Below are positions 10,672-64,000 of a DNA stretch of 64,000 bases, piece after piece. Every line of letters starts with the position of its first letter. Within the stretch, counting starts at the first letter, position 1. Under the pieces are notes generated by a model, which ran no database searches, was not told the origin of the DNA, and saw only the letters and a list, made by a program, of their open reading frames with translations. The DNA is from Ranitomeya imitator (lineage: Eukaryota): contig NC_091291.1 in the NCBI RefSeq assembly GCF_032444005.1, positions 25,358,001 through 25,422,000 of the forward strand, given 5' to 3'. Made by a program: the position numbers and the translations under genes.

Positions 10672-10964
10672 TTTACCAAGAATGTCTAATACCGGAGAAC
10701 CTGTCCTGTCCTATATTCCACAAAAAGCCTATTGATATGAATGGACAATGTGCAACACCTAATTTCACCTGTGGTGGCGCTGTAGGAAAACTGAAAATGT
10801 ACTGCCATGTGTCCCCACAGAATACAGGGATCTATGTCTGCTAATTTCCTCCCCAACTCAAGTTCTGCCACAATCGCATTTTGCTTGCAACTTTGTGTTG
10901 CCAAGAGCTCAATAAATAAAAATTTGTGTTTGTCTGTTTCTACCATGTATCCAATGGATCATTA

Positions 10965-13900: not shown

Positions 13901-16900
13901 GTGTATATGGTCAGTACAGGGGTATATATGGTCAGTACAGGGGTATATATGGTCAGTACAGGTGTATATGGTCAGTACAGGTGTATATGGTCAGTACAGG
14001 TGTATATGGTCAGTACAGGGGTATATATGGTCAGTACAGGGGTATATATGGTCAGTACAGGGGTATATATGGTCAGTACAGGGGTATATATGGTCAGTAC
14101 AGGGGTATATATGGTCAGTACAGGTTAGTACAGGTGTATATGGTCAGTACAGGTGTATATGGTCAGTACAGGTGTATATGGTCAGTACAGGGGTATATAT
14201 GGTCAGTACAGGGGTATATATGGTCAGTACAGGTTAGTACAGGTGTATATGATCAGTACAGGTGTATATGGCCAGTACAGGTATATATGGTCAGTACAGG
14301 TATATATGGTCAGTACAGGTGTATATGGTCAGTACAGGTGTATATGGTCAGTACAGGGGTATATATGGTCAGTACAGGGGTATATGGTCAGTACAGGGGT
14401 ATATATGGTCAGTACAGGGGTATATATGGTCAGTACAGGTGTATATGGTCAGTACAGGGGTATATATGGTCAGTACAGGTGTATATGGTCAGTACAGGTG
14501 TATATGGTTAGTACAGGGGTATATGGTCAGTACAGGTTAGTACAGGTGTATATGATCAGCACAGGGGTATATGGTCAGTACAGGGGTATATGGTCAGTAC
14601 AGGTCAGTACAGGTGTATATGGTCAGTACAGGGGTATATGATCAGTACAGGGGTATATGGTCAGTACAGGGTATATGGTCAGTACAGGGGTATATGGTCA
14701 GTACAGGTGTATATGGTCGGTACAGGGGTATGTGGTCAGTACAGGTGTATATGGTCAGTACAGGGGTATATGATCAGTACAGGTGTATATGGTCAGTACA
14801 GGTGTATATGGTCAGTACAGGGGTATATATGGTCAGTACAGGGGTATATATGGTCAGTACAGGTGTATATGGTCAGTACAGGTTAGTACAGGTGTATATG
14901 ATCAGTACAGGGGTATATGGCCAGTACAGGTGTATATGGTCAGTACAGGTGTATATGGTCAGTACAGGGGTATATATGGTCAGTACAGGGGTATATATGG
15001 TCAGTACAGGGGTATATATGGTCAGTACAGGTGTATATGGTCAGTACAGGGGTATATATGGTCAGTACAGGTTAGTACAGGTGTATATGATCAGTACAGG
15101 GGTATATGGCCAGTACAGGTATATATGGTCAGTACAGGTGTATATGGTCAGTACAGGTGTATATGGTCAGTACAGGTGTATATGGTCAGTACAGGGGTAT
15201 ATATGGTCAGTACAGGTGTATATGGTCAGTACAGGTGTATATGGTCAGTACAGGGGTATATATGGTCAGTACAGGGGTATATATGGTCAGTACAGGGGTA
15301 TATATGGTCAGTACAGGGGTATATATGGTCAGTACAGGGGTATATATGGTCAGTACAGGGGTATATATGGTCAGTACAGGTTAGTACAGGTGTATATGGT
15401 CAGTACAGGTGTATATGGTCAGTACAGGTGTATATGGTCAGTACAGGGGTATATATGGTCAGTACAGGGGTATATATGGTCAGTACAGGGGTATATATGG
15501 TCAGTACAGGGGTATATATGGTCAGTACAGGGGTATATATGGTCAGTACAGGTTAGTACAGGTGTATATGATCAGTACAGGTGTATATGGCCAGTACAGG
15601 TATATATGGTCAGTACAGGTATATATGGTCAGTACAGGTGTATATGGTCAGTACAGGTGTATATGGTCAGTACAGGGGTATATATGGTCAGTACAGGTGT
15701 ATATGGTCAGTACAGGGGTATATATGGTCAGTACAGGTGTATATGGTCAGTACAGGTGTATATGGTCAGTACAGGGGTATATGGTCAGTACAGGGGTATA
15801 TGGTCAGTACAGGTTAGTACAGGTGTATATGATCAGTACAGGGGTATATGGTCAGTACAGGGGTATATGGTCAGTACAGGTCAGTACAGGTGTATATGGT
15901 CAGTACAGGGGTATATGATCAGTACAGGGGTATATGGTCAGTACAGGGTATATGGTCAGTACAGGGGTATATGGTCAGTACAGGTGTATATGGTCGGTAC
16001 AGGGGTATGTGGTCAGTACAGGTGTATATGGTCTACCCTCTACCCTGTGCCAGTCATTGCACTGGTTACCCATCCACTCCAGAATCCAGTACAAAACTAC
16101 TACCCTCATCCACAAAGCACTCCATGGCTCAGCACCACCGTACATCTCCTCCCTGGTCTCAGTCTACCACCCTACCCGTGCCCTCCGCTCTGCTAATGAC
16201 CTCAGGTTAGCATCCTCAATAATCAGAACCTCCCACTCCCGTCTCCAAGACTTTACACGTGCTGCGCCGATTCTTTGGAATGCACTACCTAGGTTAATAC
16301 GATTAATCCCCAATCCCCACAGTTTTAAGCGTGCCCTAAAAACTCACTTGTTCAGACTGGCCTACCGCCTCAATGCATTAACCTAACGATCCCTGTGTGG
16401 CCTATTTATAATAAAAAAAAAAAAAAAAAAAAGGTTCCTCGCATCATGTTCTCATACACTTTATGCAGTATTAGCCCTCTGTGTCTGTACTGCTACATAC
16501 TTAGGCAGATAACTGGTTCATGCAGCTTTACATGAACACCCGAGGTTTACACTATGGCCGGTCCGAATAACTAAAGCAATTGTTACCATCCACCTCTCGT
16601 GTCTCCCCTTTTCCCCATAGTTTGTAGCTTGCGAGCAGCAGGGTCCTCACTCCTCCTGGTATCTGTATTGAACTGTATTTCTGTTATGCTGTAATGTCTA
16701 TTGTCTGTACAAGTCCCCTCTATAATTTGTAAAGCGCTGCGGAATATGTTGGCGCTATATAAATAAAAATTATTATTATTATTATTATTATTATATGGTC
16801 AGTACAGGTGTATATGGTCAGTACAGGTGTATATGGTCGGTACAGGGGTATATGGTCAGTACAGGTGTATATGGTCAGTACAGGGGTATATGATCAGTAC

Positions 16901-19900
16901 AGGTATATATGGTCAGTACAGGTGTATATGGTCAGTACAGGGGTATATGGTCAGTACAGGGGTATATATGGTCAGTACAGGGGTATATATGGTCAGTACA
17001 GGGGTATATGATCAGTACAGGTGTATATGGTCGGTACAGGTGTATATGGTCGGTACAGGGGTATATGATCAGTACAGGTGTATATGGTCGGTACAGGTGT
17101 ATATGGTCGGTACAGGGGTATATGGTCAGTACAGGTGTATATGGTCAGTACAGGGGTATATGATCAGTACAGGTATATATGGTCAGTACAGGTGTATATG
17201 GTCAGTACAGGGGTATATGGTCAGTACAGGGGTATATATGGTCAGTACAGGGGTATATATGGTCAGTACAGGGGTATATATGGTCAGTACAGGTGTATAT
17301 GGTCAGTACAGGTGTATATGGTCAGTACAGGGGTATATGGTCAGTACAGGGGTATATATGGTCAGTACAGGGGTATATATGGTCAGTACAGGTGTATATG
17401 GTCGGTACAGGGGTATATGATCAGTACAGGTGTATATGGTCGGTACAGGTGTATATGGTCGGTACAGGGGTATATGGTCAGTACAGGTGTATATGGTCAG
17501 TACAGGGGTATATGATCAGTACAGGTATATATGGTCAGTACAGGGGTATATATGGTCAGTACAGGGGTATATGGTCAGTACAGGGGTATATGGTCAGTAC
17601 AGGGGTATATATGGTCAGTACAGGGGTATATATGGTCAGTACAGGGGTATATATGGTCAGTACAGGGGTATATGGTCAGTACAGGGGTATATGATCAGTA
17701 CAGGGGTATATGATCAGTACAGGGGTATTTGATCAGTACAGGTATATATGGTCAGTACAGGTATATATGGTCAGTACAGGTATATATGGTCAGTACAGGT
17801 ATATATGGTCAGTACAGGTGTATATGGTCAGTACAGGGGTATATGATCAGTACAGGGGTATATGATCAGTACAGGGGTATATGGTCAGTACAGGTGTATA
17901 TGGTCAGTACAGGTATATATGGTCAGTACAGGTATATATGGTCAGTACAGGTATATATGGTCAGTACAGGTGTATATGGTCAGTACAGGGGTATATGATC
18001 AGTACAGGTGTATATGGTCGGTACAGGGGTATATGGTCAGTACAGGTATATATGGTCAGTACAGGGGTATATGGTCAGTACAGGTGTATATGGTCGGTAC
18101 AGGGGTATATGATCAGTACAGGTGTATATGGTCAGTACAGGTGTATATGGTCGGTACAGGGGTATATGATCAGTACAGGTGTATATGGTCGGTACAGGTG
18201 TATATGGTCGGTACAGGGGTATATGGTCAGTACAGGTGTATATGGTCAGTACAGGGGTATATGATCAGTACAGGTATATATGGTCAGTACAGGTGTATAT
18301 GGTCAGTACAGGTGTATATGGTCAGTACAGGGGTATATGGTCAGTACAGGGGTATATATGGTCAGTACAGGGGTATATATGGTCAGTACAGGTGTATATG
18401 GTCGGTACAGGGGTATATGATCAGTACAGGTGTATATGGTCGGTACAGGTGTATATGGTCGGTACAGGGGTATATGGTCAGTACAGGTGTATATGGTCAG
18501 TACAGGGGTATATGATCAGTACAGGTATATATGGTCAGTACAGGGGTATATATGGTCAGTACAGGGGTATATGGTCAGTACAGGGGTATATGGTCAGTAC
18601 AGGGGTATATATGGTCAGTACAGGGGTATATATGGTCAGTACAGGTGTATATGGTCAGTACAGGGGTATATGATCAGTACAGGGGTATATGATCAGTACA
18701 GGGGTATTTGATCAGTACAGGTATATATGGTCAGTACAGGTATATATGGTCAGTACAGGTATATATGGTCAGTACAGGTATATATGGTCAGTACAGGTGT
18801 ATATGGTCAGTACAGGGGTATATGATCAGTACAGGGGTATATGATCAGTACAGGGGTATATGGTCAGTACAGGTGTATATGGTCAGTACAGGTATATATG
18901 GTCAGTACAGGTATATATGGTCAGTACAGGTATATATGGTCAGTACAGGTGTATATGGTCAGTACAGGGGTATATGATCAGTACAGGTGTATATGGTCGG
19001 TACAGGGGTATATGGTCAGTACAGGTATATATGGTCAGTACAGGGGTATATGGTCAGTACAGGTGTATATGGTCGGTACAGGGGTATATGATCAGTACAG
19101 GTGTATATGGTCAGTACAGGTGTATATGGTCGGTACAGGGGTATATGATCAGTACAGGTGTATATGGTCGGTACAGGTGTATATGGTCGGTACAGGGGTA
19201 TATGGTCAGTACAGGTGTATATGGTCAGTACAGGGGTATATGATCAGTACAGGTATATATGGTCAGTACAGGTGTATATGGTCAGTACAGGTGTATATGG
19301 TCAGTACAGGGGTATATGGTCAGTACAGGGGTATATATGGTCAGTACAGGGGTATATATGGTCAGTACAGGTGTATATGGTCGGTACAGGGGTATATGGT
19401 CAGTACAGGTGTATATGGTCAGTACAGGGGTATATGATCAGTACAGGTATATATGGTCAGTACAGGGGTATATATGGTCAGTACAGGGGTATATGGTCAG
19501 TACAGGGGTATATGGTCAGTACAGGGGTATATATGGTCAGTACAGGGGTATATATGGTCAGTACAGGTGTATATGGTCAGTACAGGGGTATATGATCAGT
19601 ACAGGGGTATATGATCAGTACAGGGGTATATGATCAGTACAGGTATATATGGTCAGTACAGGTATATATGGTCAGTACAGGTATATATGGTCAGTACAGG
19701 TATATATGGTCAGTACAGGTGTATATGGTCAGTACAGGGGTATATGATCAGTACAGGGGTATATGATCAGTACAGGGGTATATGGTCAGTACAGGTATAT
19801 ATGGTCAGTACAGGTATATATGGTCAGTACAGGTATATATGGTCAGTACAGGTGTATATGGTCAGTACAGGGGTATATGATCAGTACAGGTGTATATGGT

Positions 19901-22900
19901 CGGTACAGGGGTATATGGTCAGTACAGGTATATATGGTCAGTACAGGGGTATATGGTCAGTACAGGGGTATATGGTCAGTACAGGGGTATATGGTCAGTA
20001 CAGGGGTATATGGTCAGTACAGGGGTATATGATCAGTACAGGTATATATGGTCAGTACAGGTGTATATGGTCAGTACAGGTGTATATGGTCAGTACAGGG
20101 GTATATGATCAGTACAGGTATATATGGTCAGTACAGGTGTATATGGTCAGTACAGGTGTATATGGTCAGTACAGGGGTATATGGTCAGTACAGGGGTATA
20201 TGGTCAGTACAGGGGTATATGGTCAGTACAGGGGTATATGGTCAGTACAGGTGTATATGGTCAGTACAGGTGTATATGGTCAGTACAGGGGTATATGGTC
20301 AGTACAGGGGTATATGGTCAGTACAGGTGTATATGGTCAGTACAGGTGTATATGGTCAGTACAGGGGTATATGGTCAGTACAGGGGTATATGGTCAGTAC
20401 AGGGGTATATGGTCAGTACAGGGGTATATGGTCAGTACAGGTATATATGGTCAGTACAGGTGTATATGGTCAGTACAGGTGTGTATGGTCAGTACAGGGG
20501 TATATGGTCAGTACAGGTGTATATGGTCAGTACAGGGGTATATGGTCAGTACAGGTGTATATGGTCAGTACAGGGGTATATGGTCAGTACAGGTGTATAT
20601 GGTCAGTACAGGTGTATATGGTCAGTACAGGGGTATATGGTCAGTACAGGTGTATATGGTCAGTACAGGGGTATATGGTCAGTACAGGTGTATATGGTCA
20701 GTACAGGGGTATATGGTCAGTACAGGTATATATGGTCAGTACAGGTGTATATGGTCAGTACAGGTGTATATGGTCAGTACAGGGGTATATGGTCAGTACA
20801 GGTGTATATGGTCAGTACAGGTGTATATGGTCAGTACAGGGGTATATATGGTCAGTACAGGGGTATATGGTCGGTACAGGTCAGTACAGGTGTATATGAT
20901 CAGTACAGGGGTATATGGTCGGTACAGGGGTATATATGGTCAGTACAGGTGTATATGGTCAGTACAGGGGTATATGGTCAGTACAGGTGTATATGGTCAG
21001 TACAGGGGTATATGGTCAGTACAGGGGTATATGGTCAGTACAGGGGTATATGATCAGTACAGGTATATATGGTCAGTACAGGGGTATATGGTCAGTACAG
21101 GTGTATATGGTCAGTACAGGTATATATGGTCAGTACAGGTGTATATGGTCAGTACAGGTATATGGTCAGTACAGGTGTATATGGTCAGTACAGGTGTATA
21201 TGGTCAGTACAGGTGTATATGGTCAGTACAGGTATATGGTCAGTACAGGTGTATATGGTCAGTACAGGGGTATATGGTCAGTACAGGTGTATATGGTCAG
21301 TACAGGTGTATATGGTCAGTACAGGGGTATATGGTCAGTACAGGGGTATATGGTCAGTACAGGTATATATGGTCAGTACAGGTGTATATGGTCAGTACAG
21401 GTGTATATGGTCAGTACAGGGGTATATGGTCAGTACAGGTGTATATGGTCAGTACAGGTGTATATGGTCAATACAGGGGTATATGATCAGTACAGGTGTA
21501 TATGGTCAGTACAGGGGTATATGGTCAGTACAGGTGTATATGGTCAGTACAGGTGTATATGGTCAGTACAGGGGTATATATGGTCAGTACAGGGGTATAT
21601 GGTCGGTACAGGTCAGTACAGGTGTATATGATCAGTACAGGGGTATATGGTCGGTACAGGGGTATATATGGTCAGTACAGGTGTATATGGTCAGTACAGG
21701 GGTATATGGTCAGTACAGGTGTATATGGTCAGTACAGGGGTATATGGTCAGTACAGGGGTATATGGTCAGTACAGGGGTATATGATCAGTACAGGTATAT
21801 ATGGTCAGTACAGGGGTATATGGTCAGTACAGGTGTATATGGTCAGTACAGGTATATATGGTCAGTACAGGTGTATATGGTCAGTACAGGTGTATATGGT
21901 CAGTACAGGTGTATATGGTCAGTACAGGTGTATATGGTCAGTACAGGGGTATATGGTCAGTACAGGTGTATATGGTCAGTACAGGTGTATATGGTCAGTA
22001 CAGGGGTATATATGGTCAGTACAGGGGTATATGGTCGGTACAGGTCAGTACAGGTGTATATGATCAGTACAGGGGTATATGGTCGGTACAGGGGTATATA
22101 TGGTCAGTACAGGTGTATATGGTCAGTACAGGGGTATATGGTCAGTACAGGTGTATATGGTCAGTACAGGGGTATATGGTCAGTACAGGGGTATATGGTC
22201 AGTACAGGTATATATGGTCAGTACAGGGGTATATGGTCAGTACAGGTGTATATGGTCAGTACAGGTATATATGGTCAGTACAGGGGTATATGGTCAGTAC
22301 AGGTATATATGGTCAGTACAGGTGTATATGGTCAGTACAGGTGTATATGGTCAGTACAGGTGTATATGGTCAGTACAGGTGTATATGGTCAGTACAGGTA
22401 TATATGGTCAGTACAGGGGTATATGGTCAGTACAGGTATATATGGTCAGTACAGGTGTATATGGTCAGTACAGGTATATATGGTCAGTACAGGGGTATAT
22501 GGTCAGTACAGGTATATATGGTCAGTACAGGTGTATATGGTCAGTACAGGTATATATGGTCAGTACAGGGGTATATGGTCAGTACAGGTGTATATGGTCA
22601 GTACAGGTGTATATGGTCGGTACAGGGGTATATGGTCAGTACAGGGGTATATGGTCAGTACAGGTGTATATGGTCGGTACAGGGGTATATGGTCGGTACA
22701 GGGGTATATGGTCGGTACAGGGGTATATGGTCAGTACAGGGGTATATGGTCAGTACAGGTGTATATGATCAGTACAGGTATATATGGTCAGTACAGGGGT
22801 ATATGGTCAGTACAGGGGTATATGGTCAGTACAGGTGTATATGGTCGGTACAGGGGTATATGGTCAGTACAGGGGTATATGGTCAGTACAGGTGTATATG

Positions 22901-23339
22901 GTCGGTACAGGGGTATATGGTCGGTACAGGGGTATATGGTCGGTACAGGGGTATATGGTCAGTACAGGGGTATATGGTCAGTACAGGTGTATATGATCAG
23001 TACAGGTATATATGGTCAGTACAGGTATATATGGTCAGTACAGGGGTATATGGTCAGTACAGGTGTATATGGTCAGTACAGGTATATATGGTCAGTACAG
23101 GTGTATATGGTCAGTACAGGTGTATATGGTCGGTACAGGGGTATATGGTCGGTACAGGGGTATATGGTCAGTACAGGGGTATATGGTCAGTACAGGGGTA
23201 TATGGTCAGTACAGGGGTATATATGGTCAGTACAGGGGTATATGGTGGTCAGTACAGGGGTATATGGTCAGTACAGGGGTATATGGTCAGTACAGGGGTA
23301 TATGGTCAGTACAGGGGTATATGGTCAGTACAGGGGTAT
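10965..23339 (+). repeat. ~12.4-kb tandem array of 19/21-bp units (ggtcagtacaggggtatat[at])
   Basis: Directly visible; roughly 600 units with variants ggtg/gggg, gatc/ggtc/ggcc, ggtcggta; interrupted at ~16034-16791. Confidence 0.99.
16034..16791 (+). mobile_element. 5'-truncated L2-type LINE (ORF2 C-terminus, 3' UTR, (TAT)n tail) inserted in the array
   Basis: LCQSLHWLPIHSRIQYKT...RLQDFTRAAPILWNALP...FKRALKTHLF; tail ttattattatt; tatatggtc on both flanks. Confidence 0.9.
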
Positions 23340-38700: not shown

Positions 38701-39977
38701 CAACCGCCGCAACGATGATGATGACGATTTCCCACCGCCACCTCCGCCGTATACCGAGAGCGAGTCTGTATCTTCACGAGGGAAGAAGCTGAAAAAGGTC
38801 AGTGTTGTTCCATACCCCACCCAGACAAAAAAAAAATAAGGGTGGTCCCAGAAAATTCCAAATACCGAACCATATTTTTTCCCCCTGAAAAGGCAAATTA
38901 GCAAATTTTCTCAATTCTTGCAGTCATGTCAGATTGACAGCTTTGGAATGAAGGGAAATCTGTCAGTCACAGTGCAGAGCGTGGCATGACTTCTGTCTGT
39001 GCTTCCTGCTCTGTCCCTTTAAGGTGTTTATCAGGGATGCGCTAGAACTTTGCTGATTAATGCAGCTCTCCTTGCCTTTCAAAATGGAAGAGTCCTCTGA
39101 TCTCCACCTACTAGGCTCTTTAGAGAACCAAAGAGTCCTATCATGTGGTTCCAGGACTAGCGCCACCCGGGGGCTATACGTGGTATTGCAGGTCAGAACC
39201 ATAAAGTCCACAGGGCTGAGCAGTGACGTTAATCAGCCCCACCGATGTGGTATTGGTGTAGGTCATGCATACCTCATGATCGGCTTAGCTGCGGGTGGCT
39301 CCGGCTTAGCTGCGGGTGGCTCCGGCTTAGCTGCGGGTGGCTCCGGCTTAGCTGCGGGTGGCTCCGGCTTAGCTGCGGGTGGCTCCGGCTTGGCTGCGGG
39401 TGGCTCCGGCTTGGCTGCGGGTGGCTCCGGCTTAGCTGCGGGTGGCTCCGGCTTAGCTGCGGGTGGCTCCGGCTTGGCTGCGGGTGGCTCCGGCTTGGCT
39501 GCGGGTGGCTCCGGCTTGGCTGCGGGTGGCTCCGGCTTGGCTGCGGGTGGCTCCGGCTTGGCTGCGGGTGGCTCCGGCTTGGCTGCGGGTGGCTCCGGCT
39601 TGGCTGCGGGTGGCTCCGGCTTGGCTGCGGGTGGCTCCGGCTTTGCTGCCGGTGGCTCCGGCTTGGCTGCGGGTGGCTCCGGCTTTGCTGCGGGTGGCTT
39701 CGGCTTTGCTGCGGGTGGCTCCGGCTTTGCTGCGGGTGGCTGCGGGTGGCTCCGGCTTTGCTGCGGGGGCTCCGGCTTTGCTGCGGGCGGCTCCGGCTTT
39801 GCTGCGGGCGGCTCCGGTTTTACTGACAGGTTCTGTCACCTCCATTGGGTTGTTGGGGTGCCATGAAAGGCGACAACCCTTTAAAGGCTTGTGCGGGGAA
39901 GGTTCCTGCTCTTCTCATCCTTTTCCTTTCCTTCTCTGCAGGGCGAAGCTCTGAGCCGGGAAAGTCTCATCGTGTGA
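23723..39977 (+). CDS. LSR: Lipolysis-stimulated lipoprotein receptor / angulin-1, 10 exons: join(23723..23777,28249..28587,28669..28788,32503..32559,35376..35522,37016..37174,37408..37464,37560..37688,38151..38797,39942..39977), 581 aa
   Basis: All introns are GT-AG with consistent phases; total 1746 nt. Contains the Ig domain ([19 protein letters not shown]...NNEAYAEL), TM plus Cys-rich [53 protein letters not shown] and C-terminal ALSRESLIV*, all diagnostic of LSR. Confidence 0.96.
24223..25620 (+). repeat. 43-bp minisatellite (~32 copies), LSR intron 1
   Basis: ctgctccatccattctgtatgggactgccgagcatacgcacat; degenerates toward the right end. Confidence 0.97.
25990..27470 (+). repeat. ~31-bp minisatellite, degenerate on the left, with a 259-bp internal duplication
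   Basis: tatatacggtgtattaggggggcggcattag; 26102 and 26361 segments duplicated. Confidence 0.9.
28249..28587 (+). CDS. LSR: LSR exon 2 (Ig domain N-part)
   Basis: tttgcag acceptor; [11 protein letters not shown]...[10 protein letters not shown]; donor A|GTAGGT. Confidence 0.95.
28669..28788 (+). CDS. LSR: LSR exon 3 (Ig domain C-part)
   Basis: 120 nt, [18 protein letters not shown]...AELMVL; donor G|GTAAG. Confidence 0.95.
28905..31680 (+). repeat. 86-bp satellite-like tandem repeat, LSR intron 3, interrupted by a MITE
   Basis: gtatgtacacagtgactgcaccagcagaatagtgagtgcagctctggagtataatacaggatgtaactcaggatcagtaatgtaat. Confidence 0.97.
30030..30846. mobile_element. Tc1/mariner-superfamily (pogo/Tigger-like) MITE
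   Basis: TIR cc(a/g)tatata(c)tcgagtataagccga at both ends; TA TSD at 30028-29 and 30847-48. Confidence 0.85.
32503..32559 (+). CDS. LSR: LSR exon 4 (57-nt juxtamembrane exon)
   Basis: tttag|GC AGA ACA TCA...ATG GAA G|gtaact = [19 protein letters not shown], similar to the mammalian GRTSGVAELLPGFQ exon as recalled. Confidence 0.85.
32711..33614. other. Assembly gap (904 N) in LSR intron 4
   Basis: Run of N. Confidence 1.
34080..34820 (+). repeat. 21-bp GC-rich minisatellite, LSR intron 4
   Basis: gccggctgcggagggagatgc repeated. Confidence 0.95.
35376..35522 (+). CDS. LSR: LSR exon 5 (TM and Cys-rich region)
   Basis: 147 nt, [33 protein letters not shown]... Confidence 0.97.
35935..36935 (+). 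repeat. ~40-bp minisatellite (~25 copies), LSR intron 5
   Basis: aaatctgtatgtagtgagctccctctagtggtggctgtat. Confidence 0.95.
37016..37174 (+). CDS. LSR: LSR exon 6
   Basis: [19 protein letters not shown]...; donor G|GTGAGG. Confidence 0.93.
37408..37464 (+). CDS. LSR: LSR exon 7
   Basis: [19 protein letters not shown]; donor G|GTAAG. Confidence 0.92.
37560..37688 (+). CDS. LSR: LSR exon 8
   Basis: [35 protein letters not shown]; donor A|GTAAGT. Confidence 0.95.
38151..38797 (+). CDS. LSR: LSR exon 9 (Arg/Asp-rich cytoplasmic tail)
   Basis: [12 protein letters not shown]...[10 protein letters not shown]...[11 protein letters not shown]...KKLKK; donor GTCAGT. Confidence 0.93.
39285..39820 (+). 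repeat. 21-bp GC-rich minisatellite, LSR intron 9
   Basis: gctgcgggtggctccggctt(a/g) repeated. Confidence 0.95.
39942..39977 (+). CDS. LSR: LSR exon 10 ([11 protein letters not shown])
   Basis: Pyrimidine tract + ctgcag acceptor; matches the recalled mammalian ending ALSRESLVV. Confidence 0.92.
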   Translation, partial: GEALSRESLIV

Positions 39978-42888: not shown

Positions 42889-43019
42889 TTAATAACTTGA
42901 TTTTGCACAAGAAATCACAGATGATGTCTAATACCACAAGGACAGAGTTATTAGACACTAAAATTAAAAAAAGGAAATTGCTACAAAGACTGAAAAATCT
43001 CATGGATAAAAACTTAAAT

Positions 43020-43490
43020 CTTGTATTATACCCCAGAGCGGCACTCACTATTCTGCTGGTGCAGTCACTGTGTACATACATTACATTACTGATCCTGAGT
43101 TACCTCCTGTATTATACCCCAGAGCTGCACTCACTATTCTGCTGGTGCAGTCACTGTGTACATACATTACATTACTGATCCCGAGTTACATCCTGTATTA
43201 TACCCCAGAGCTGCACTCACTATTCTGCTGGTGCAGTCACTGTGTACATACATTACATTACTGATCCTGAGTTACATCCTGTATTATACCCCAGAGCTGC
43301 ACTCACTATTCTGCTGGTGCAGTCACTGTGTACATACATTACATTACTGATCCTGAGTTACATCCTGTATTATACCCCAGAGCTGCACTCACTATTCTGC
43401 TGGTGCAGTCACTGTGTACATACATTACATTACTGATCCTGAGTTACATCATGTATTATACCCCAGAGCTGCACTCACTATTCTGCTGTT
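43020..43490 (-). repeat. Same 86-bp repeat in the opposite orientation
   Basis: Reverse complement of the intron-3 unit. Confidence 0.95.
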
Positions 43491-48036: not shown

Positions 48037-49952
48037 GTGAGTAATCCGCGACCGTTAATTCTCAGCAGAACCCGGGGGGGGGGGGAGTGAAGGGTTAATA
48101 TTTTTTTAATTTGATATTCTTCCTGTTTATTTATTAGACGTCACTTTGTTTTTTTATTTTATTTGTAAATATTTATTTTACTCCCATTGTTATATTTTAA
48201 CTTACTTTATTTATATTTTATATAATTTATTTTAATAAATATATATATATATATTTTTTTATTATTATTCCCCCCCCCCCCCCTCAGGTATTTTTTTTAG
48301 AATTTTTAAAGGGTATTTTTTATTAATTTTTTTTTTTCTATATTTTCCATTTTATTTTATTCCAGTCTTTTGTGATCACATGACTGCGCTTGTTTCTGTT
48401 GCGTCCGGGGGTCTCTTGTAACGCTGCAGCGCTATTCTGTGACTGTTGGTCCAGACGCTTTTACACTGCGATAGGAAGGGTATAAATGTCTGATTGCAGG
48501 GGGTCCCGTCAGTCCCCAGACCCCCCCCCCCCACATTCCATGCAGGTGCCATTGTAGGTTTGAGGGCTTAAGGACCCTCCTTCTTGTGAACGATTGGACC
48601 CCTGGTGATGATAAATATGTCCCTGTTATGGGCTATTAGGGGTTAACGATCGTCGCTGCAGATGCTTAACGCTTCCGGTCTCTTTCACCTGGGAGCTGTC
48701 GCTCTGCACGTAGCTCAGGGAGGTTTTACACTCCTGGGGGGGGAAGGGTGGGAAGTGCAGGTTTATTTCTGAGGTGAAACAACTACAAATCTCAGCATGC
48801 TCGTCCAGCCACAGGCATGCTGGGATATGTAGTTTGACCGCAGGTCGTAGTCATGTCCTTATCCTGATCTTTTTGGAAGGTCGGGACCCCCCAGAATGTG
48901 TCGGTGACATTTATGCCACCTTATATACAGATAGGGACAGTCTTAAAGGGGCGGTAGCCTTTGCCTTTTATTGCTACCATATTGTTATAATAGGAGCAGC
49001 TGACTTGGGTGGAAATGTCATAAAGTGACGGTGGCTGAGGTCACTTATCCTCCAAATATCAAAGACTGACTGGCACTTCCAGACAGAAAAACAGGTGCAT
49101 GCTAAAGAGCCACTAATGTGTTTGAAAATGGCTGATAACAGAGAGCATAAGAATGTACAGCTACACTGAGGGGTATTGCAGAGCTGGTGACCCCATGACC
49201 TCGGCTCATTATGATTTTTGTGTCTTTTCAGTTGATCCCCCTGTTCCTGTTCGTGGGGTTAGGAGGTGCCGGCTCCCTCCTCTACGCTCTGAGGGTGACT
49301 ATGTCCAGCCCTGAAGTCGTGTAAGTTCCCTCTCACCATGTCAGGAAGGGGTTAAAGGAATTTTGTGAATTAATCTTGATATTAAATTTGCATTTTCATT
49401 TATTTATTTTTTGCAGCTGGGACAAGAAAAACAACCCGGACCCCTGGAGCAAGAAGAGCCCAAACTACCAGTACAAGGTACGGATGGATGGGGGGACGCC
49501 GCCATTATTATACTGGACCATTATCATGGTTGTAGCGGTCTGACGGCAACATGGCATGCTGGGAGTTGTATTTTTGCAATAGCTGTAGACCTTTGGTCTA
49601 ATTAAATGTTATATGCACGTTCCCCTTTGGATTGAATCCCCCCCACCATTGTCAGCAGTCGTGTTCCCTTGTATGCAGGCAACGAGTATTACGGCAACAT
49701 TGGTTTTTAAAGTGGAGATGTATTGAAACCTGTTGCTAACGAAACCAGTGGGGTCCGAGTGCCGCAGAGGATGACCCATCCTCGTGATGACTGACTGACA
49801 GATCTTTTCCTGGAACGCCCCTTTAAGTTGACGATTGTGTATCCCCCCCCCTCATAAGGAACGAGTCCCATTAACCATTTCTTGTGTCTCCGCAGTTTTA
49901 CAATGAAACAATCGACTACAAGAACTTGAAGAAGGAAGGTCCTGACTTCTAA
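47995..49952 (+). CDS. NDUFA4: NDUFA4/COXFA4-family cytochrome c oxidase accessory subunit, 4 exons: join(47995..48036,49232..49320,49417..49477,49896..49952), 82 aa MFRTMLTHARKHPSLIPLFLFVGLGGAGSLLYALRVTMSSPEVVWDKKNNPDPWSKKSPNYQYKFYNETIDYKNLKKEGPDF
   Basis: Exons of 42/89/61/57 nt with GT-AG introns and consistent phases. Family motifs KHPSLIPLF, a single TM helix, WD(K)KNNPxPW, YQYKF and C-terminal DYxxLKKxxPDF. The family is clear; which paralogue it is is not resolved. Confidence 0.93.
49232..49320 (+). CDS. NDUFA4: NDUFA4-like exon 2 (TM helix)
   Basis: tcttttcag|TTG ATC CCC...GTC GT|GTAAGT. Confidence 0.93.
49417..49477 (+). CDS. NDUFA4: NDUFA4-like exon 3
   Basis: ttttgcag|C TGG GAC AAG...TAC AAG|GTACGG. 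Confidence 0.93.
49896..49952 (+). CDS. NDUFA4: NDUFA4-like exon 4
   Basis: ctccgcag|TTT TAC AAT...GAC TTC TAA. Confidence 0.93.
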   Translation, partial: FYNETIDYKNLKKEGPDF

Positions 49953-50267
49953 GCCCGCTGCGCTCGTGCAGAAGCCGCCACCATTCAGTCCAGGAATGTC
50001 CATTCCCGCTATTTAATCAGATCCGGCCGGTGACGTCGCTTTCTCGGCTCGTTCTGTCGTTAATGTGTTTAGTGGAACTTAATCCGATTACCGGCGTCTG
50101 CTCCTCGGGGCGAAGCGCTCGCTCCATCCACTGACTTGTTAAATACATGGATTTCTACATGAGCCATGTCTACTGTGAAGTTATTGTCTCGGGGAGCCTG
50201 GAAGGTCTGGTGTGAGGGCTTCTGCATTTAGGTGGGGTTCTCGAGCTGTGACCCCCTATTTATGGCA

Positions 50268-50566
50268 AGCAGAGAAAAAGGAGCAGCATCCATACCAGGT
50301 GAATCGTGTCCAAAACGGTCTTTATTCAGCCATATAAAAGATACGTTTCGGCCAAATTGGCCTTTGTCAAGCATGATGCTTGACAAAGGCCAATTTGGCC
50401 GAAACGTAGTATCTTTTATATGGCTGAATAAAGACCATTTTGGACACGATTCACCTGGTATGGATGCTGCTCCTTTTTCTCTGCTTGTGATTTTGGGTCC
50501 GACTGGATCCTTGGACTCCTGTGCGTGCATCCCTCATCCGAGTGCTGGTGGTTGACTTTTTCTATG
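50268..50566 (+). mobile_element. Short Penelope-like insertion: near-perfect ~110-bp palindrome plus tail, 15-bp TSD
   Basis: Arms ~50268-50373 and ~50376-50486; TSD cccctatttatggca at 50253-50267 and 50567-50581; AATAAA at 50427-50432. Confidence 0.75.
50375..50413 (+). ncRNA. Putative minimal type I hammerhead ribozyme motif (U3-A8 variant)
   Basis: GATGC|TTGACAA-A-GGCC-AATTT-GGCC-GAA-ACGT-A|GTATC: helix I GATGC/GTATC (one G-U), helix II GGCC/GGCC, palindromic ACGT helix III, NUH triplet GUA. Confidence 0.55.
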
Positions 50567-52977
50567 CCCCTATTTATGGCAGGGAAATAATTCGGTCTAA
50601 GGGGCCCCTTGTTCCAGAGATCAGAAGAAGTCTCGACTCTGAGACCCTTTTCCCATGGTAATATGGCAGTGTGTCCCCCTGTACTGTCGCCCCTATACAC
50701 CATTAGTGGGATGAGAGAGTAACAGGAAAGGTGATGATCAGACTGACTGACAGCTGTCACTCCGGGCTCTGATATTGTGACATGAAATACTTTGTCACTG
50801 GTTTGTATATGGGGGAGATGCCCTTTAAATTTTGGCTAATCATATAAGCCAGTAAGCACAACACCCTGGCGGATCTTCCCCGCGCAAGGAGCGCGGAACA
50901 CTCCATGTAATAGTATATCATACAGATCATGTCGCAATTGTACAACCTATAGATGAAGAGTGTCACACAAACGTAGAGCAAAATCCAAACTACTTTATTT
51001 CAGACTATAAAAAATGACAAACGTAACAATTTTTAAAAAAGGGGCCTCAAACCAAAAAACACAAAGGGGTCGAACGGCCACAGCAGTAGGACACTAGTAC
51101 ACATATTTGGCATTAAGGGTACCTTTCTTGCACATATATTAAAATTATACAAGCATATAGTTCTGCATACATCTACATTGAAGATTGAAGATGATAATCC
51201 TACATTTGCATGAAGTCTAGATAACATTGCAAACACTGGAAAGAAAGGGTTAATTGCCTATCCCACAAAAAGAAATCTTTTTTTGGTACTATGTGTCAGT
51301 GACCAGATTATTTCAACACAATGTTACGGTGTGTTGAAATGAAGCTTCAGCCAATAAATACAGGATGCTTAAAGTACCAATACAGCGGTATATAGGTTTC
51401 AATTATTGGTATAAAAGATCGCAGCCTATAGTGTAAAGTGAAATATGTCCATGTGCCCAATTGCACCTGGAAACAGGAACCTGTAATATCACTCTGCCAA
51501 TGCAGCCCATTGAAAAGTAGTATAATTGTGCCCCCTATGGGTCCAGTGAGGCATTGAGTGATTGGCGGCAACAAGGGAAGATAACAGATTTTATTTTTTT
51601 TTTTTTAAAGCCTGAGACTATGGACCTAAAATAAAAATCCAAAAAAGGGCAAAATCCTGCTCCACATCAGGAGTTCGGCATCTTCAGTAATGTCACATAT
51701 GGACCGAGTGGGACGTCACCGGCTTCTGCTGAGCACAGTGACATCTGCATTAATGTGGGGGGAGGGGAATAACTAAAAATACAGAAAGGTTTACATAGTC
51801 AGTTGGGGGATCGGACCTGTGATCCAAAATGCATCGTAGTCAAATACAAAGCTGAGTGAGGGGCTGGAAGGCTGGGGTGGTGCTACACTCCAGCCGTCAT
51901 CTGACATTTCTCCAAGGATGTGGATACTATACATCAAAGCAGCGCGGCCTGGAGAATAGGAACTGATGGATCTATCCTCCGATCACTGCAAGGCTAATAA
52001 CATGAATAACCTAATATATGGAGAAAAGTATGTGCCCCCCACAACCACCTCAGGGCTTCTCTGTCCTCCAGCTACATCCATACTAATTAACACCCTTCAC
52101 GACCTTGGACGTATAGTTATGTCATCGGTCGTGTCCCCGCATTTGATGTCGGCCCAACATTCACTGCAAATGACAGCTGATCTGTCGTGTGCCTCCAACA
52201 ATCACAGGTGGATCCGAAGATCCACCAGCAGCTGTTAACCAGTTAAATGCTGCTGTCAATGACTAATGGCAGTGTTTACATGCCCAGGTGGAAGCACAGC
52301 ATAAGATCCGGCCGTTAGCGCCGGTCAGAGCTCTGTAGTTCACACGCTGTCATACAGGTGAAAGCCTGAACCAGTAGCTGTGACCGGTGGTCAAAGGGTG
52401 ACCACCGGTCACAGGCGTCGGCTGATGAGAGAGTACTACTCATCAGCGTATGCCTGCTGTCGCTAATAGCAGGCGAGGCTGACGAGTATTCATCAGCCAG
52501 CCTGTGCTATAAATGTAAAAAAAAAAATGACGTGGAGTCTCCTACTTTTGATAACCAGCACAAGCAAAACCAACAGCTGCGGGCTGCAACCCTCAGCTGT
52601 CAGCTTTATCATAGACTGTTATCAAGAATAGAGGGGTCCAACTTTTTTTTTTTCAATTTAAATAAAACGGCGTGGGGTCCCCATCCATTTTTGACAACCA
52701 GCCAAGCTAAAACAGCTGGTGGATGGTATTCTCAGGCTGTTAAGGGGCCATGGATATTGCCACTTCCCCTTCCTCCCAGCCTAAAAATAACAGCCCAAGA
52801 AAAGGCGCATCTATTTTCTGGGGTGGCTGCTGGCTGCCATTTTTAGGCTGGGAAGGGCTAATATCCGTGGCCCTTTACCAGTCTGAGAATACCAGGCCCC
52901 AGCTGTCTACTTAAGCTTGACTGATTGTCAAAAATGGAGGGTGGGGAGAACCCCCTCCGTTTTTTTTTTTAAATTAA

Positions 52978-61329: not shown

Positions 61330-64000
61330 AGCGGCCGGGACCGGGGAGGTAGAGGCGGCCGGGGCTGTGTATAAGGATGGTTCCATGCAGGAGCTGCCGG
61401 GACCGGGGAGGTAGAGGCGGCCGGGGCTGTGTATACGGATGGTTCCATGCAGGAGCTGCCGGGACCGGGGAGGTAGAGGCGGCCGGGGCTGTGTATAAGG
61501 ATGGTTCCATGCAGGAGCTGCCGGGACCGGGGAGGGAGAGGCGGCCTGGGGCGAGTGTGGTGGCCGGGGCTGTGTATAAGGATGGTTCCATGCAGGAGCT
61601 GCCGGGACCGGGGAGGGAGAGGCGGCCGGGGCTGTGTATAAGGATGGTTCCATGCAGGAGCTGCCGGGACCGGGGAGGGAGAGGCGGCCGGGGCTGTGTA
61701 TACGGATGGTTCCATGCAGGAGCTGCCGGGACCGGGGAGGTAGAGGCGGCCGGGGCTGTGTATACGGATGGTTCCATGCAGGAGCTGCCGGGACCGGGGA
61801 GGTAGAGGCGGCCGGGGCTGTGTATACGGATGGTTCCATGCAGGAGCTGCCGGGACCGGGGAGGGAGAGGCGGCCGGGGCTGTGTATACGGATGGTTCAA
61901 TGCAGGAGCTGCCGAGACCGGGGAGGTAGAGGCGGCCGGGGCTGTGTATACGGATGGTTCCATGCAGGAGCTGCCGGGACCGGGGAGGTAGAGGCGGCCG
62001 GGGCTGTGTATACGGATGGTTCCATGCAGGAGCTGCCGGGACCGGGGAGGTAGAGGCGGCCGGGGCTGTGTATACGGATGGTTCCATGCAGGAGCTGCCG
62101 GGACCGGGGAGGGAGAGGCGGCCGGGGCTGTGTATACGGATGGTTCAATGCAGGAGCTGCCGAGACCGGGGAGGTAGAGGCGGCCGGGGCTGTGTATACG
62201 GATGGTTCCATGCAGGAGCTGCCGGGACCGGGGAGGTAGAGGCGGCCGGGGCTGTGTATACGGATGGTTCCATGCAGGAGCTGCCGGGACCGGGGAGGTA
62301 GAGGCGGCCGGGGCTGTGTATACGGATGGTTCCATGCAGGAGCTGCCGGGACCGGGGAGGTAGAGGCGGCCGGGGCTGTGTATACGGATGGTTCCATGCA
62401 GGAGCTGCCGGGACCGGGGAGGGAGAGGCGGCCGGGGCTGTGTATACGGATGGTTCAATGCAGGAGCTGCCGAGACCGGGGAGGTAGAGGCGGCCGGGGC
62501 TGTGTATATGGATGGTTCAATGCAGGAGCTGCCGAGACCGGGGAGGTAGAGGGGGCCGGGGCTGTGTATAAGGATGGTTCCATGCAGGAGCTGCCGGGAC
62601 CGGGGAATGAGAGGCGGCCGGGGCTGTGTATACGGATGGTTCAATGCAGGAGCTGCCGAGACTGGGGAGGTAGAGGCGGCCGGGGCTGTGTATACGGATG
62701 GTTCAATGCAGGAGCTGCCGAGACTGGGGAGGTAGAGGGGGCCGGGGCTGTGTATATGGATGGTTCCATGCAGGAGCTGCCGGGACCGGGGAGGTAGAGG
62801 CGGCCGGGGCTGTGTATAAGGATGGTTCCATGCAGGAGCTGCCGGGACCGGGGAATGAGAGGCGGCCGGGGCTGTGTATACGGATGGTTCAATGCAGGAG
62901 CTGCCGAGACTGGGGAGGTAGAGGCGGCCGGGGCTGTGTATACGGATGGTTCAATGCAGGAGCTGCCGAGACTGGGGAGGTAGAGGGGGCCGGGGCTGTG
63001 TATATGGATGGTTCCATGCAGGAGCTGCCGGGACTGGGGAGGTAGAGGCGGCCGGGGCTGTGTATAAGGATGGTTCCATGCAGGAGCTGCCGGGACCGGG
63101 GAGGTAGAGGCGGCCGGGGCTGTGTATATGGATGGTTCCATGCAGGAGCTGCCGGGACCGGGGAGGGAGAGGCGGCCGGGGCTGTGTATACGGATGGTTC
63201 CATGCAGGAGCTGCCGGGACCGGGGAGGTAGAGGCGGCCGGGGCTGTGTATACGGATGGTTCCATGCAGGAGCTGCCGGGACCGGGGAGGTAGAGGCGGC
63301 CGGGCCTGTGTATACGGATGGTTCCATGCAGGAGCTGCCGGGACCGGGGAGGTAGAGGCGGCCGGGCCTGTGTATATGGATGGTTCAATGCAGGAGCTGC
63401 CGAGACTGGGGAGGGAGAGGCGGCCGGGGCTGTGTATAAGGATGGTTCAATGCAGGAGCTGCCGGGACCGGGGAGGTAGAGGCGGCCGGGGCTGTGTATA
63501 CGGATGGTTCAATGCAGGAGCTGCCGGGACCGGGGAGGTAGAGGCGGCCGGGGCTGTGTATACGGATGGTTCAGTGCAGGAGCTGCCGGGACCGGGGAGG
63601 TAGAGGCGGCCGGGGCTGTGTATACGGATGGTTCCATGCAGGAGCTGCCGGGACCGGGGAGGTAGAGGCGGCCGGGGCTGTGTATATGGATGGTTCCATG
63701 CAGGAGCTGCCGGGACCGGGGAGGTAGAGGCGGCCGGGGCTGTGTATAAGGATGGTTCCATGCAGGAGCTGCCGGGACCGGGGAGGTAGAGGCGGCCGGG
63801 GCTGTGTATACGGATGGTTCAATGCAGGAGCTGCCGAGACTGGGGAGGTAGAGGGGGCCGGGGCTGTGTATATGGATGGTTCCATGCAGGAGCTGCCGGG
63901 ACCGGGGAGGTAGAGGCGGCCGGGGCTGTGTATAAGGATGGTTCCATGCAGGAGCTGCCGGGACCGGGGAATGAGAGGCGGCCGGGGCTGTGTATACGGA
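61330..64000 (+). repeat. 62-bp G-rich minisatellite (~43 copies, runs off the window)
   Basis: gggaccggggaggtagaggcggccggggctgtgtatacggatggttccatgcaggagctgcc. Confidence 0.98.

What the first reader, a model, noticed from the sequence alone, without database searches (positions are those of the whole stretch)
50253..50581. Hammerhead-bearing Penelope-like palindrome just downstream of the NDUFA4-like stop, supplying its first canonical AATAAA
Seen: a 299-bp insert flanked by a 15-bp TSD (cccctatttatggca), made of two head-to-head ~110-bp arms plus a unique tail. The plus-strand arm folds as a minimal type I hammerhead (helix I GATGC/GTATC, core UUGACAA...GAAA, helix II GGCC/GGCC, palindromic ACGU helix III, predicted cut after 50408). 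The minus-strand arm lacks 3 nt (gta) and loses helix I. There is no AATAAA or ATTAAA between the stop (49952) and the element's AATAAA at 50427; only weak variants occur (AATACA ~50142, TATAAA ~50333). Known: Penelope-like retroelements carry minimal hammerheads in their pseudo-LTRs, often insert as inverted pairs and make long TSDs; the U3-A8 covariant of C3-G8 is tolerated. Inference: the mRNA may end inside the element and so carry a ~75-bp dsRNA stem and a ribozyme in its 3' UTR. The two folds are mutually exclusive, which could act as a stability or editing switch on a respiratory subunit.
Basis: partly seen in the sequence, partly recalled or inferred. Interest (0 to 1): 0.75.

Follow-up and report, generated by a model that had tools for sequence, protein, structure and literature searches.

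The report
Penelope-type inverted hammerhead insert after NDUFA4
A young, protein-free fragment of a Penelope-like jumping gene, pasted in as two mirror-image copies carrying a minimal self-cutting RNA motif, sits about 315 bases after the stop codon of a poison frog's NDUFA4 gene; it is an ordinary example of a kind already seen many times in this genome, and nothing suggests it works as a switch.

Summary
A 299-bp insert (50268-50566) is flanked by an exact 15-bp target-site duplication. It consists of two head-to-head arms of about 108 bp and a 79-81-bp tail on one side only.

The + strand arm carries the window's only match to the published minimal hammerhead descriptor for Penelope-like elements (PLEs). 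It has the U3-A8 covariant core, a bulged A between positions 9 and 10.1, a G10.1-C11.1 pair, a palindromic ACGU, and a 5-bp helix I. There were 0 such hits in 300 shuffles. The minus-strand copy lacks GTA and loses helix I. No Rfam hammerhead model matches.

The layout matches published Penelope insertions, so this is a new member of a known kind. The scan has already found it repeatedly in this poison-frog genome, including in other 3' UTRs.

The AATAAA claim is literally true, but its use is untested. No RNA data could be obtained. An AATACA at 50142 with a GU-rich downstream element is the likelier site used before the insertion, about 100 bp upstream of the insert.

In any transcript holding both arms, the ~108-bp hairpin (-209 kcal/mol) buries both the ribozyme (helix I probability ~1e-29) and the AAUAAA (>99.7% paired). 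The proposed switch is not supported.

The parts
49896..49952 (+). Last coding exon of the frog NDUFA4 gene, stop TAA at 49950-49952. This is context, not part of the element.
   Evidence: Translates to FYNETIDYKNLKKEGPDF*. The splice acceptor AG is at 49894-49895. Gene identity comes from scan note s1-279681.
50142..50147 (+). AATACA variant poly(A) hexamer, 190 nt after the stop. It is the likeliest poly(A) signal before the insertion, with CA candidate cleavage sites at 50158 and 50165.
   Evidence: The downstream 50 nt are 66% G+U with three UGU, against a 50% background. Use is inferred, not shown.
50253..50267 (.). Left copy of the 15-bp target-site duplication.
   Evidence: 15/15 identical to 50567-50581.
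50268..50374 (-). Left arm: an inverted, 5'-truncated copy whose sense strand is the minus strand. Its hammerhead copy lacks GTA, so helix I is lost.
   Evidence: Reverse complement of the right arm apart from 1 substitution and a 3-nt gap. It fails the full descriptor but passes the relaxed core + helix II + GAAA scan.
50375..50375 (.). Single unpaired G at the centre of the palindrome, the head-to-head junction.
   Evidence: 1 nt between the inner arms.
50376..50485 (+). Right arm: the sense copy on the + strand, 5'-truncated at the junction.
50375..50413 (+). Minimal type I hammerhead motif of the PLE kind with the U3-A8 covariant core. The predicted cut is after A50408, and helix III can form only by dimerisation through ACGU (50404-50407).
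   Evidence: Only descriptor hit in the window, with 0 hits in 300 shuffles. Helices I and II are the minimum-free-energy fold of the isolated 39-mer. No Rfam hammerhead hit.
50427..50432 (+). First canonical AATAAA after the NDUFA4 stop. It lies in the descending arm of the hairpin, opposite TTTATT at 50322-50327.
   Evidence: It is >99.7% base-paired in every transcript model that holds both arms. The downstream 50 nt are 70% G+U.
50486..50566 (+). Unique tail at the 3' (outer) end of the right arm only. It ends in CTTTTTCTATG, which resembles the arm end CTTTTTCTCTG.
   Evidence: D2/I4. It is not otherwise similar to the arms. One-sided tails are a described PLE trait (PMC3846280, PMC8557442).
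50567..50581 (.). Right copy of the 15-bp target-site duplication.

Best explanation
This is one young insertion of a non-coding 3'-terminal (pseudo-LTR) fragment of a Penelope-like retroelement, or of its non-autonomous retrozyme-type derivative.

How it most likely arose (inferred):
- A staggered cut in the target gave the 15-bp duplication.
- cDNA synthesis was primed on the target. The CA/TG overlap at the left junction fits priming by microhomology.
- At the 5' end of the RNA template (about 50376), synthesis switched template or snapped back. This produced two copies joined head-to-head at exactly the same truncation point.
- One copy runs 79-81 nt further 3' than the other, which is the tail.

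What it carries: the sense copy on the + strand has an intact minimal hammerhead with a U3-A8 core. That ribozyme type needs a second copy to build helix III. The other copy lost helix I through a 3-nt slip at a GTAGTA repeat.

What it does at this locus: the ribozyme is most likely inert. It has no tandem partner. If it is transcribed from the NDUFA4 strand, the left arm is made first and locks both the ribozyme and the AAUAAA into a ~108-bp perfect hairpin.

The insert lies about 315 bp after the NDUFA4 stop and probably about 100 bp beyond the gene's original poly(A) site (AAUACA at 50142). It is therefore most likely a neutral passenger just outside the mRNA, or at most part of a minor read-through isoform.
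For: Shown:
- Exact 15-bp TSD, a palindrome with a one-nucleotide centre, a one-sided tail, and no poly(A) or tRNA-like part.
- The hammerhead is on the strand that puts the 5' ends at the centre and the 3' ends outward. This is the head-to-head form called most frequent in PMC3846280, which also describes palindromes at the inverted junction and an optional tail at the 3' end of one inverted pLTR. PMC8557442 says the same.
- The motif is the only descriptor hit in 128 kb of strand, with 0 hits in 300 shuffles. [quoted passage not shown] That paper also documents U3-A8 as a natural covariation in Cercyon PLEs.
- Youth: the arms differ by 1 CpG transition and 1 indel in 109 bp, and the TSD is intact.
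- Inertness: the hairpin is -209 kcal/mol against -11 for the HHR scaffold. Helix I probability is ~1e-29. There is no second motif in the window. Lone min-HHRs showed no detectable cleavage in vitro and dimers only low activity (PMC4209133).
- Poly(A) site before the insertion: GU-rich downstream elements follow only the 50142 and 50427 hexamers, not the distal ones at 51138, 51353 and 51630.

Leads only: scan notes report the same kind of insert, and the same U3-A8 core, elsewhere in this genome.
Against: - No other family copy, consensus or PLE open reading frame could be compared. Family membership rests on architecture and the motif, not on homology.
- No curated Rfam hammerhead model matches, even at E<=10 on the 55-nt motif alone.
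- The tail (79-81 bp) is longer than the 30-40 bp usually described.
- The poly(A) site is inferred from sequence heuristics only. AAUACA is a weak variant, so a sizeable share of transcripts could read into the element.
- Folding figures are equilibrium predictions, not in vivo data.
Confidence: 0.8

Rival explanations
1. NDUFA4 mRNA is polyadenylated at the element's AAUAAA (cleavage around 50445-50455). It therefore carries a ~75-bp dsRNA stem and a ribozyme in its 3' UTR, and alternation between the hairpin and the hammerhead fold tunes its stability or editing.
For: AATAAA at 50427 is the first canonical hexamer after the stop. It is followed by CA dinucleotides at 50445 and 50452 and a 70% G+U stretch. 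The upstream AAUACA is a weak variant. In Xenopus, retrozyme copies that overlap exons lie mostly in 3' UTRs (bioRxiv 10.64898/2026.07.22.740005). A scan note reports a similar insert that does seem to sit in the IFT25 mRNA (unchecked).
Against: The hexamer and the cleavage zone are >99.7% paired in the hairpin, which should hinder their recognition. The hammerhead fold has probability ~1e-29 once the left arm is present. There is no cis partner for dimerisation. Lone min-HHRs are inactive in vitro (PMC4209133). The insertion is young, so an essential gene already had a working site, most plausibly at 50142. No RNA evidence of any kind was obtained. My odds: some use of this poly(A) site about 0.2-0.25; a real switch below 0.03. 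The confidence given here is for the full statement including the switch.
Confidence: 0.03
2. The insert is not PLE-derived. It would be another retroposon (for example a LINE-mobilised SINE inserted by twin priming) or a fold-back element, and the hammerhead-like motif would be a coincidence.
For: No homology to any PLE sequence could be tested. Rfam finds no hammerhead. Twin priming by LINEs also gives inverted copies with 7-20-bp TSDs.
Against: Chance expectation for the motif is below 1 per 300 shuffled windows, and analytically about 1e-9 per nucleotide. There is no poly(A) or simple-repeat tail and no tRNA-like head. A 15-bp TSD excludes known DNA transposon superfamilies (established knowledge). 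The perfect head-to-head junction with a one-sided tail is the published PLE signature (PMC3846280).
Confidence: 0.07
3. The palindrome is an assembly artefact, a falsely duplicated and inverted read segment, rather than real DNA.
For: PLE inverted repeats are known to trouble assemblies (PMC8557442, PMC3846280). No reads could be laid on the locus.
Against: The arms are not identical: they differ by 1 substitution and a 3-nt indel. The structure is bounded by an exact TSD and carries an asymmetric tail, which an artefact would not create.
Confidence: 0.03

Closest known systems
Penelope-like element insertions with inverted pseudo-LTRs and a one-sided tail (Arkhipova et al. 2013, PMC3846280; Craig et al. 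2021, PMC8557442)
   Same: Head-to-head inverted 5'-truncated copies, a palindrome at the junction, an extension at the 3' end of only one inverted copy, a TSD, no poly(A), and the hammerhead near the 3' end on the sense strand.
   Different: There is no open reading frame and no direct pLTR, only about 110 bp of the 3' end per arm. The tail is 79-81 bp rather than 30-40 bp. The TSD is 15 bp against 8-10 bp in the rotifer examples.
Minimal hammerheads of metazoan PLEs, including the U3-A8 covariant of Cercyon elements in Schistosoma mansoni (Cervera & de la Pena 2014, PMC4209133)
   Same: No helix III of its own, with a palindromic 15.1-16.1 tetrad for dimerisation. [quoted passage not shown] Dual motifs on opposite strands 100-700 bp apart are mentioned there.
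   Different: Helix II here is 4-5 bp rather than 6-8 bp. The host is a poison frog. Activity is untested.
Vertebrate non-LTR retrozymes (Li, Clavereau & Pollet 2026, bioRxiv 10.64898/2026.07.22.740005)
   Same: Non-autonomous, PLE-pLTR-related, type I hammerhead carriers that are abundant in amphibians. The exon-overlapping copies lie mostly in 3' UTRs.
   Different: Retrozymes are defined by tandem direct repeats, each with a hammerhead. This locus is an inverted pair with only one intact motif.
Other head-to-head hammerhead palindromes already noted in this same genome (s1-294783 in the IFT25 3' UTR; s1-274995, s1-279622, s1-288156, s1-271814)
   Same: The same kind of insert, with TSDs of 14-17 bp and the hammerhead at or near the apex. 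One also lies after a gene's stop codon.
   Different: The sequence family could not be compared, and a search by sequence gave nothing. This copy has the U3-A8 core.
Inverted Alu pairs in mammalian 3' UTRs (my own knowledge, not tested here)
   Same: A TE-derived long intramolecular dsRNA next to or inside a 3' UTR, which is a potential ADAR or nuclear-retention substrate.
   Different: A different element class. Here it is not even shown that the hairpin is part of the mRNA.

Membership tests
Penelope-like element (EN+ PLE) derived insertion | Head-to-head inverted 5'-truncated copies with a palindromic junction | tested here: met
   Arms 50266-50374 / 50376-50487 around G50375, 99-100% complementary. 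The hammerhead strand places the 5' ends at the centre.
Penelope-like element (EN+ PLE) derived insertion | Optional short extension (tail) at the 3' end of only one of the inverted copies | tested here: met
   Unique 79-81 bp at 50486-50566, on the right only. It is longer than the 30-40 bp usually reported (PMC8557442).
Penelope-like element (EN+ PLE) derived insertion | Target-site duplication of variable length and no poly(A) tail | tested here: met
   15/15-bp TSD. Both ends lack A-runs or simple repeats.
Penelope-like element (EN+ PLE) derived insertion | Sequence homology to a pLTR of an element encoding RT + GIY-YIG, or to a curated PLE consensus | not testable with these tools
   No eukaryotic repeat library or genome-wide search was available. 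The element is single-copy in the window.
PLE minimal hammerhead (min-HHR, Cervera & de la Pena 2014) | Core boxes CUGANGA (or the U3-A8 covariant UUGANAA), GAAA and UH, with helices I and II | tested here: met
   UUGACAA, GAAA and GUA with the cut after 50408. Helix I is 5 bp and helix II 4-5 bp. It is the single hit in the window, with 0 in 300 shuffles.
PLE minimal hammerhead (min-HHR, Cervera & de la Pena 2014) | Traits not imposed by the descriptor: a nucleotide between 9 and 10.1, G10.1-C11.1, palindromic 15.2/16.2 | tested here: met
   A50387 is the bulge, G50388-C50400 the pair, and ACGU lies at 50404-50407.
PLE minimal hammerhead (min-HHR, Cervera & de la Pena 2014) | Family-level covariation and conservation of the motif | not testable with these tools
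   No other copies were available. Scan notes that the U3-A8 core recurs in this genome are unchecked leads.
PLE minimal hammerhead (min-HHR, Cervera & de la Pena 2014) | Self-cleavage (as a dimer) | not testable with these tools
   This needs an in vitro transcription and cleavage assay.
Curated hammerhead families in Rfam (types I, II, III, HH9, HH10) | Covariance-model score at or above the gathering threshold | tested here: not met
   No hammerhead model is reported even at E<=10, on 551 nt and on the 55-nt motif alone. This is expected for a motif without helix III or loops and with a variant core.
Non-LTR retrozyme | Tandem direct repeats, each unit with a type I hammerhead | tested here: not met
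   The two copies are inverted, not tandem, and only one motif is intact.
MITE / DNA transposon | Terminal inverted repeats with a short TSD of fixed, superfamily-specific length (2-10 bp) | tested here: not met
   The TSD is 15 bp and an asymmetric tail breaks the terminal symmetry.
miRNA precursor (mir-2513, mir-9436 and others) | Rfam gathering score | tested here: not met
   66.5 bits against a gathering score of 89, and 35.8 against 80. The hits appear on both strands and are mostly compensated pairs, as any long perfect hairpin would give.

The most novel reading that the evidence does not exclude
A measurable share of this frog's NDUFA4 transcripts reads past the weak AAUACA and is processed at, or runs through, the retroelement. 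That would give a respiratory-chain mRNA isoform with a ~75-108-bp perfect dsRNA at its 3' end, subject to A-to-I editing, Dicer processing or nuclear retention. It would be a very recent, lineage-specific change in the regulation of a housekeeping gene caused by a Penelope-type insert.
Probability: 0.2. Interest if true: 0.35.

Novelty: new member of a known kind. Interest (0 to 1): 0.15.

Why it matters
It matters little beyond annotation. The locus is a clean, young and well-bounded example of how Penelope-type elements insert: an exact TSD, a one-nucleotide junction, a one-sided tail, and microhomology at one end. It adds a U3-A8 covariant minimal hammerhead in an amphibian. It could serve as a presence/absence marker among poison frogs, and as a natural test of whether a TE-borne AAUAAA buried in a long hairpin can be used. 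It does not give evidence for a ribozyme-based switch on a respiratory subunit.

Tried and rejected
There is therefore no RNA or read evidence and no outside copies.
- The search for homologous proteins with the exon-3-containing ORF (49376-49540) found no candidate. That closed the route from the protein to transcript contigs.
- The search of earlier findings by sequence was blank, which means nothing.
- Rfam gave only sub-threshold miRNA-hairpin models on both strands. I reject these as generic hairpin matches.
- I tested the idea that the tail is a diverged repeat of the arm's 3' part. The score was not above shuffles. Only the terminal CTTTTTCT(C/A)TG resemblance remains, and it is weak.
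- A tRNA-derived SINE head: none found.
- A second hammerhead in cis for dimerisation: none in 64 kb, even with a relaxed core + helix II + GAAA scan.
- RNAcofold of two right-arm copies gave a domain-swapped duplex rather than the textbook double hammerhead. This is uninformative, because the energy model cannot score the catalytic core.
- PMC1986816, on tolerance of C3-G8 exchanges, is not held. It is cited only through the reference list of PMC3884650.
Full report
**What is there.** CCCCTATTTATGGCA occurs at 50253-50267 and again at 50567-50581, 15/15 identical, and encloses 299 bp (50268-50566). Inside is a near-perfect palindrome with arms 50266-50374 and 50376-50487 around a single G at 50375. 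The inner 33 nt are 100% complementary and the outer 79 nt 99%. Aligning the arms shows one substitution, a CpG-to-CpA transition in the right arm, and one 3-nt indel: GTA at 50409-50411 is present only on the right. The remaining 79-81 bp (to 50566) are unique and not significantly similar to the arms (score 19 against a shuffle mean of 18.3). Both outer termini do end in a similar CTTTTTCT(C/A)TG (D2/I4). The outermost CA/TG of the palindrome overlaps the end of the left TSD. The element occurs once in the window.

**The hammerhead.** No Rfam hammerhead model matches at gathering score, at E<=10 over 551 nt, or at E<=10 on the 55-nt motif alone. The only hits are sub-threshold miRNA-hairpin models on both strands, which any long perfect hairpin would give.

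Rfam does not hold the minimal hammerheads of Penelope-like elements (PLEs). I therefore wrote a descriptor after Cervera & de la Pena 2014 (PMC4209133). It requires:
- helix I of at least 4 bp;
- core CUGANGA or its documented U3-A8 covariant UUGANAA;
- 0-1 nt between positions 9 and 10.1;
- helix II of at least 4 bp;
- GAAA, complementary 15.2/16.2, U, then H.

It finds exactly one site in 64 kb on both strands: 50375-50413 on the + strand, with the cut after A50408. It finds none in 300 dinucleotide-preserving shuffles of the window.

The site also shows the traits that paper lists as emerging without being imposed. There is a nucleotide between 9 and 10.1 (A50387), a G10.1-C11.1 pair (G50388-C50400), and a palindromic 15.1-16.1 tetrad (ACGU, 50404-50407). 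The same paper reports U3-A8 as a natural covariation in Cercyon PLEs, with about 1,300 hits in Schistosoma, and dual motifs on opposite strands 100-700 bp apart.

The isolated 39-mer folds into helices I and II as its minimum-free-energy structure. The minus-strand copy keeps the core, helix II and GAAA, but without GTA its helix I no longer pairs. A chance origin for the motif is therefore very unlikely. Cleavage itself is untested.

**What kind of element.** The hammerhead strand fixes the orientation. The sense copy runs from the centre rightwards, so the two copies abut by their 5' ends and point their 3' ends outward, with the extra tail on one 3' end.

This is the published Penelope architecture:
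- Arkhipova et al. 2013 (PMC3846280) describe inverted pLTRs flanked by 8-10-bp TSDs. [quoted passage not shown]
- Craig et al. 2021 (PMC8557442) describe the inverted 5'-truncated copy, the one-sided 30-40-bp tail, and hammerheads in pLTRs.

Other classes fit poorly. A 15-bp TSD without a poly(A) tail, and with no tRNA-like part, argues against DNA transposons or MITEs and against L1-type SINEs. The element is not a retrozyme in the strict sense, which requires tandem direct units.

What I could not test is homology to a PLE that encodes RT and GIY-YIG, or to a curated consensus. No eukaryotic repeat library or genome-wide search was available.

**How it most likely arose (inferred).** A staggered cut 15 bp apart was followed by target-primed reverse transcription of a PLE 3'-end RNA. 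The left junction shows 2-nt microhomology. When synthesis reached the 5' end of the template, at about 50376, it switched templates or snapped back. This explains why both copies are truncated at exactly the same base, with one extra nucleotide between them. One copy was primed or resolved 79-81 nt further 3' than the other, which gives the tail. The junction is 33 nt upstream of the predicted ribozyme cut, so the template end was not a ribozyme-cleaved end.

One CpG transition and one slip in 109 bp, together with an intact TSD, indicate a young insertion. This is of the order of a few million years or less and is very loosely constrained.

**The gene context and the poly(A) claim.** The window comes from a poison frog (scan notes). 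The gene upstream is the frog's NDUFA4 (scan note s1-279681). I read its four small exons directly, and the last one translates to FYNETIDYKNLKKEGPDF* with the stop at 49950-49952.

It is true that no AATAAA or ATTAAA lies between the stop and 50427. Because the insertion is recent, though, this essential gene must already have had a working site.

| Hexamer | Position | G+U in the downstream 50 nt (background 50%) |
|---|---|---|
| AATACA | 50142 | 66%, with three UGU |
| AATAAA (in the element) | 50427 | 70% |
| ATTAAA / AATAAA / AATAAA (distal) | 51138 / 51353 / 51630 | 44-50% |

AATACA at 50142 also has CA dinucleotides at 50158 and 50165. The likeliest ancestral 3' end is therefore around 50160, which places the insert about 100 bp beyond the mRNA. 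This is a heuristic, not a measurement. AAUACA is a weak variant, so some read-through into the element is plausible. I put about 0.2-0.25 on appreciable use of the element's site.

**The switch idea.** On either strand the whole insert folds into a ~108-bp hairpin of about -209 kcal/mol. The hammerhead scaffold is worth about -11 kcal/mol. I modelled UTR transcripts ending at 50450 or reading through to 50700. In both, helix I pairs have probability ~1e-29, helix II ~1e-15, and the six AAUAAA bases are 99.7-99.9% paired.

On the NDUFA4 strand the left arm is transcribed first. The inner 33-bp hairpin can therefore close before the 3' strand of helix I even exists. The motif also needs a second copy to form helix III. 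There is none in cis, even under a relaxed scan. Lone min-HHRs gave no detectable cleavage and dimers only low cleavage in vitro (PMC4209133). The two folds are mutually exclusive only in the sense that one of them essentially never forms. I find no support for a regulatory switch.

If the hairpin is transcribed, it would be a generic long-dsRNA substrate for ADAR or Dicer. That rests on my own knowledge and is untested here.

**Relation to earlier work.** The scan has already found this kind of insert many times on other DNA of the same genome. Two cases lie in predicted 3' UTRs: IFT25 (s1-294783) and a ficolin-like lectin (s1-307376). Their follow-ups also concluded that these are ordinary PLE-type relics. 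First-reader notes say the U3-A8 core recurs in other Penelope tails of this genome. I could not check any of these and use them only as leads. Li, Clavereau & Pollet (bioRxiv 10.64898/2026.07.22.740005) report that in Xenopus the few retrozyme copies overlapping exons lie mostly in 3' UTRs.

**Limits.** As a result there are no reads, no transcripts, and no outside copies. The word-based protein search with an exon-containing ORF found nothing. The N run at 32711-33614 was left untouched.

**Verdict.** The classification as a Penelope-type head-to-head insert with a minimal U3-A8 hammerhead is well supported by architecture and motif, at about 0.8-0.85. The functional inference is unsupported. 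This is a new member of a known kind and of low interest.

Noticed in passing
window 10954-23339: A 12.4-kb array of a 19-bp minisatellite (about 652 copies, 85% matches) with very strong GC skew (about +0.5).
   Followed up: no
window 6304-7101 and 8488-8958: Degenerate telomere-like (CCCTAA-derived) higher-order arrays with periods of 42, 59, 101 and 143 bp. Together with the many other minisatellites in the window, this suggests a subtelomeric or interstitial-telomeric type of region.
   Followed up: no
window 28904-30029, 30846-31677 and 43014-43488: Arrays of one 86-bp repeat family. The third array is in the opposite orientation to the first two, judged by reading the consensus units. 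The arrays flank the N run at 32711-33614, which I did not touch.
   Followed up: partly
window 52681-52941: An older fold-back element of about 260 bp, built of three nested inverted-repeat segments (82-91% complementary) and flanked by T/A runs. It has no hammerhead core by my scans and may be a MITE or a decayed inverted insertion.
   Followed up: partly
window 61562-64000: A GC-rich 62-bp tandem array (at least 39 copies, 96% matches) that runs off the end of the window. Similar 21-bp GC-rich arrays lie at 34292-34820 and 39281-39825.
   Followed up: no
window 50268-50280 and 50556-50566: Both outer termini of the insert end in nearly the same 11-12-nt motif, (C)ATAGAAAAAG / AGCAGAGAAAAAG read inward. 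This may mark a preferred priming or resolution site on the PLE RNA. With two copies only, chance is not excluded.
   Followed up: partly
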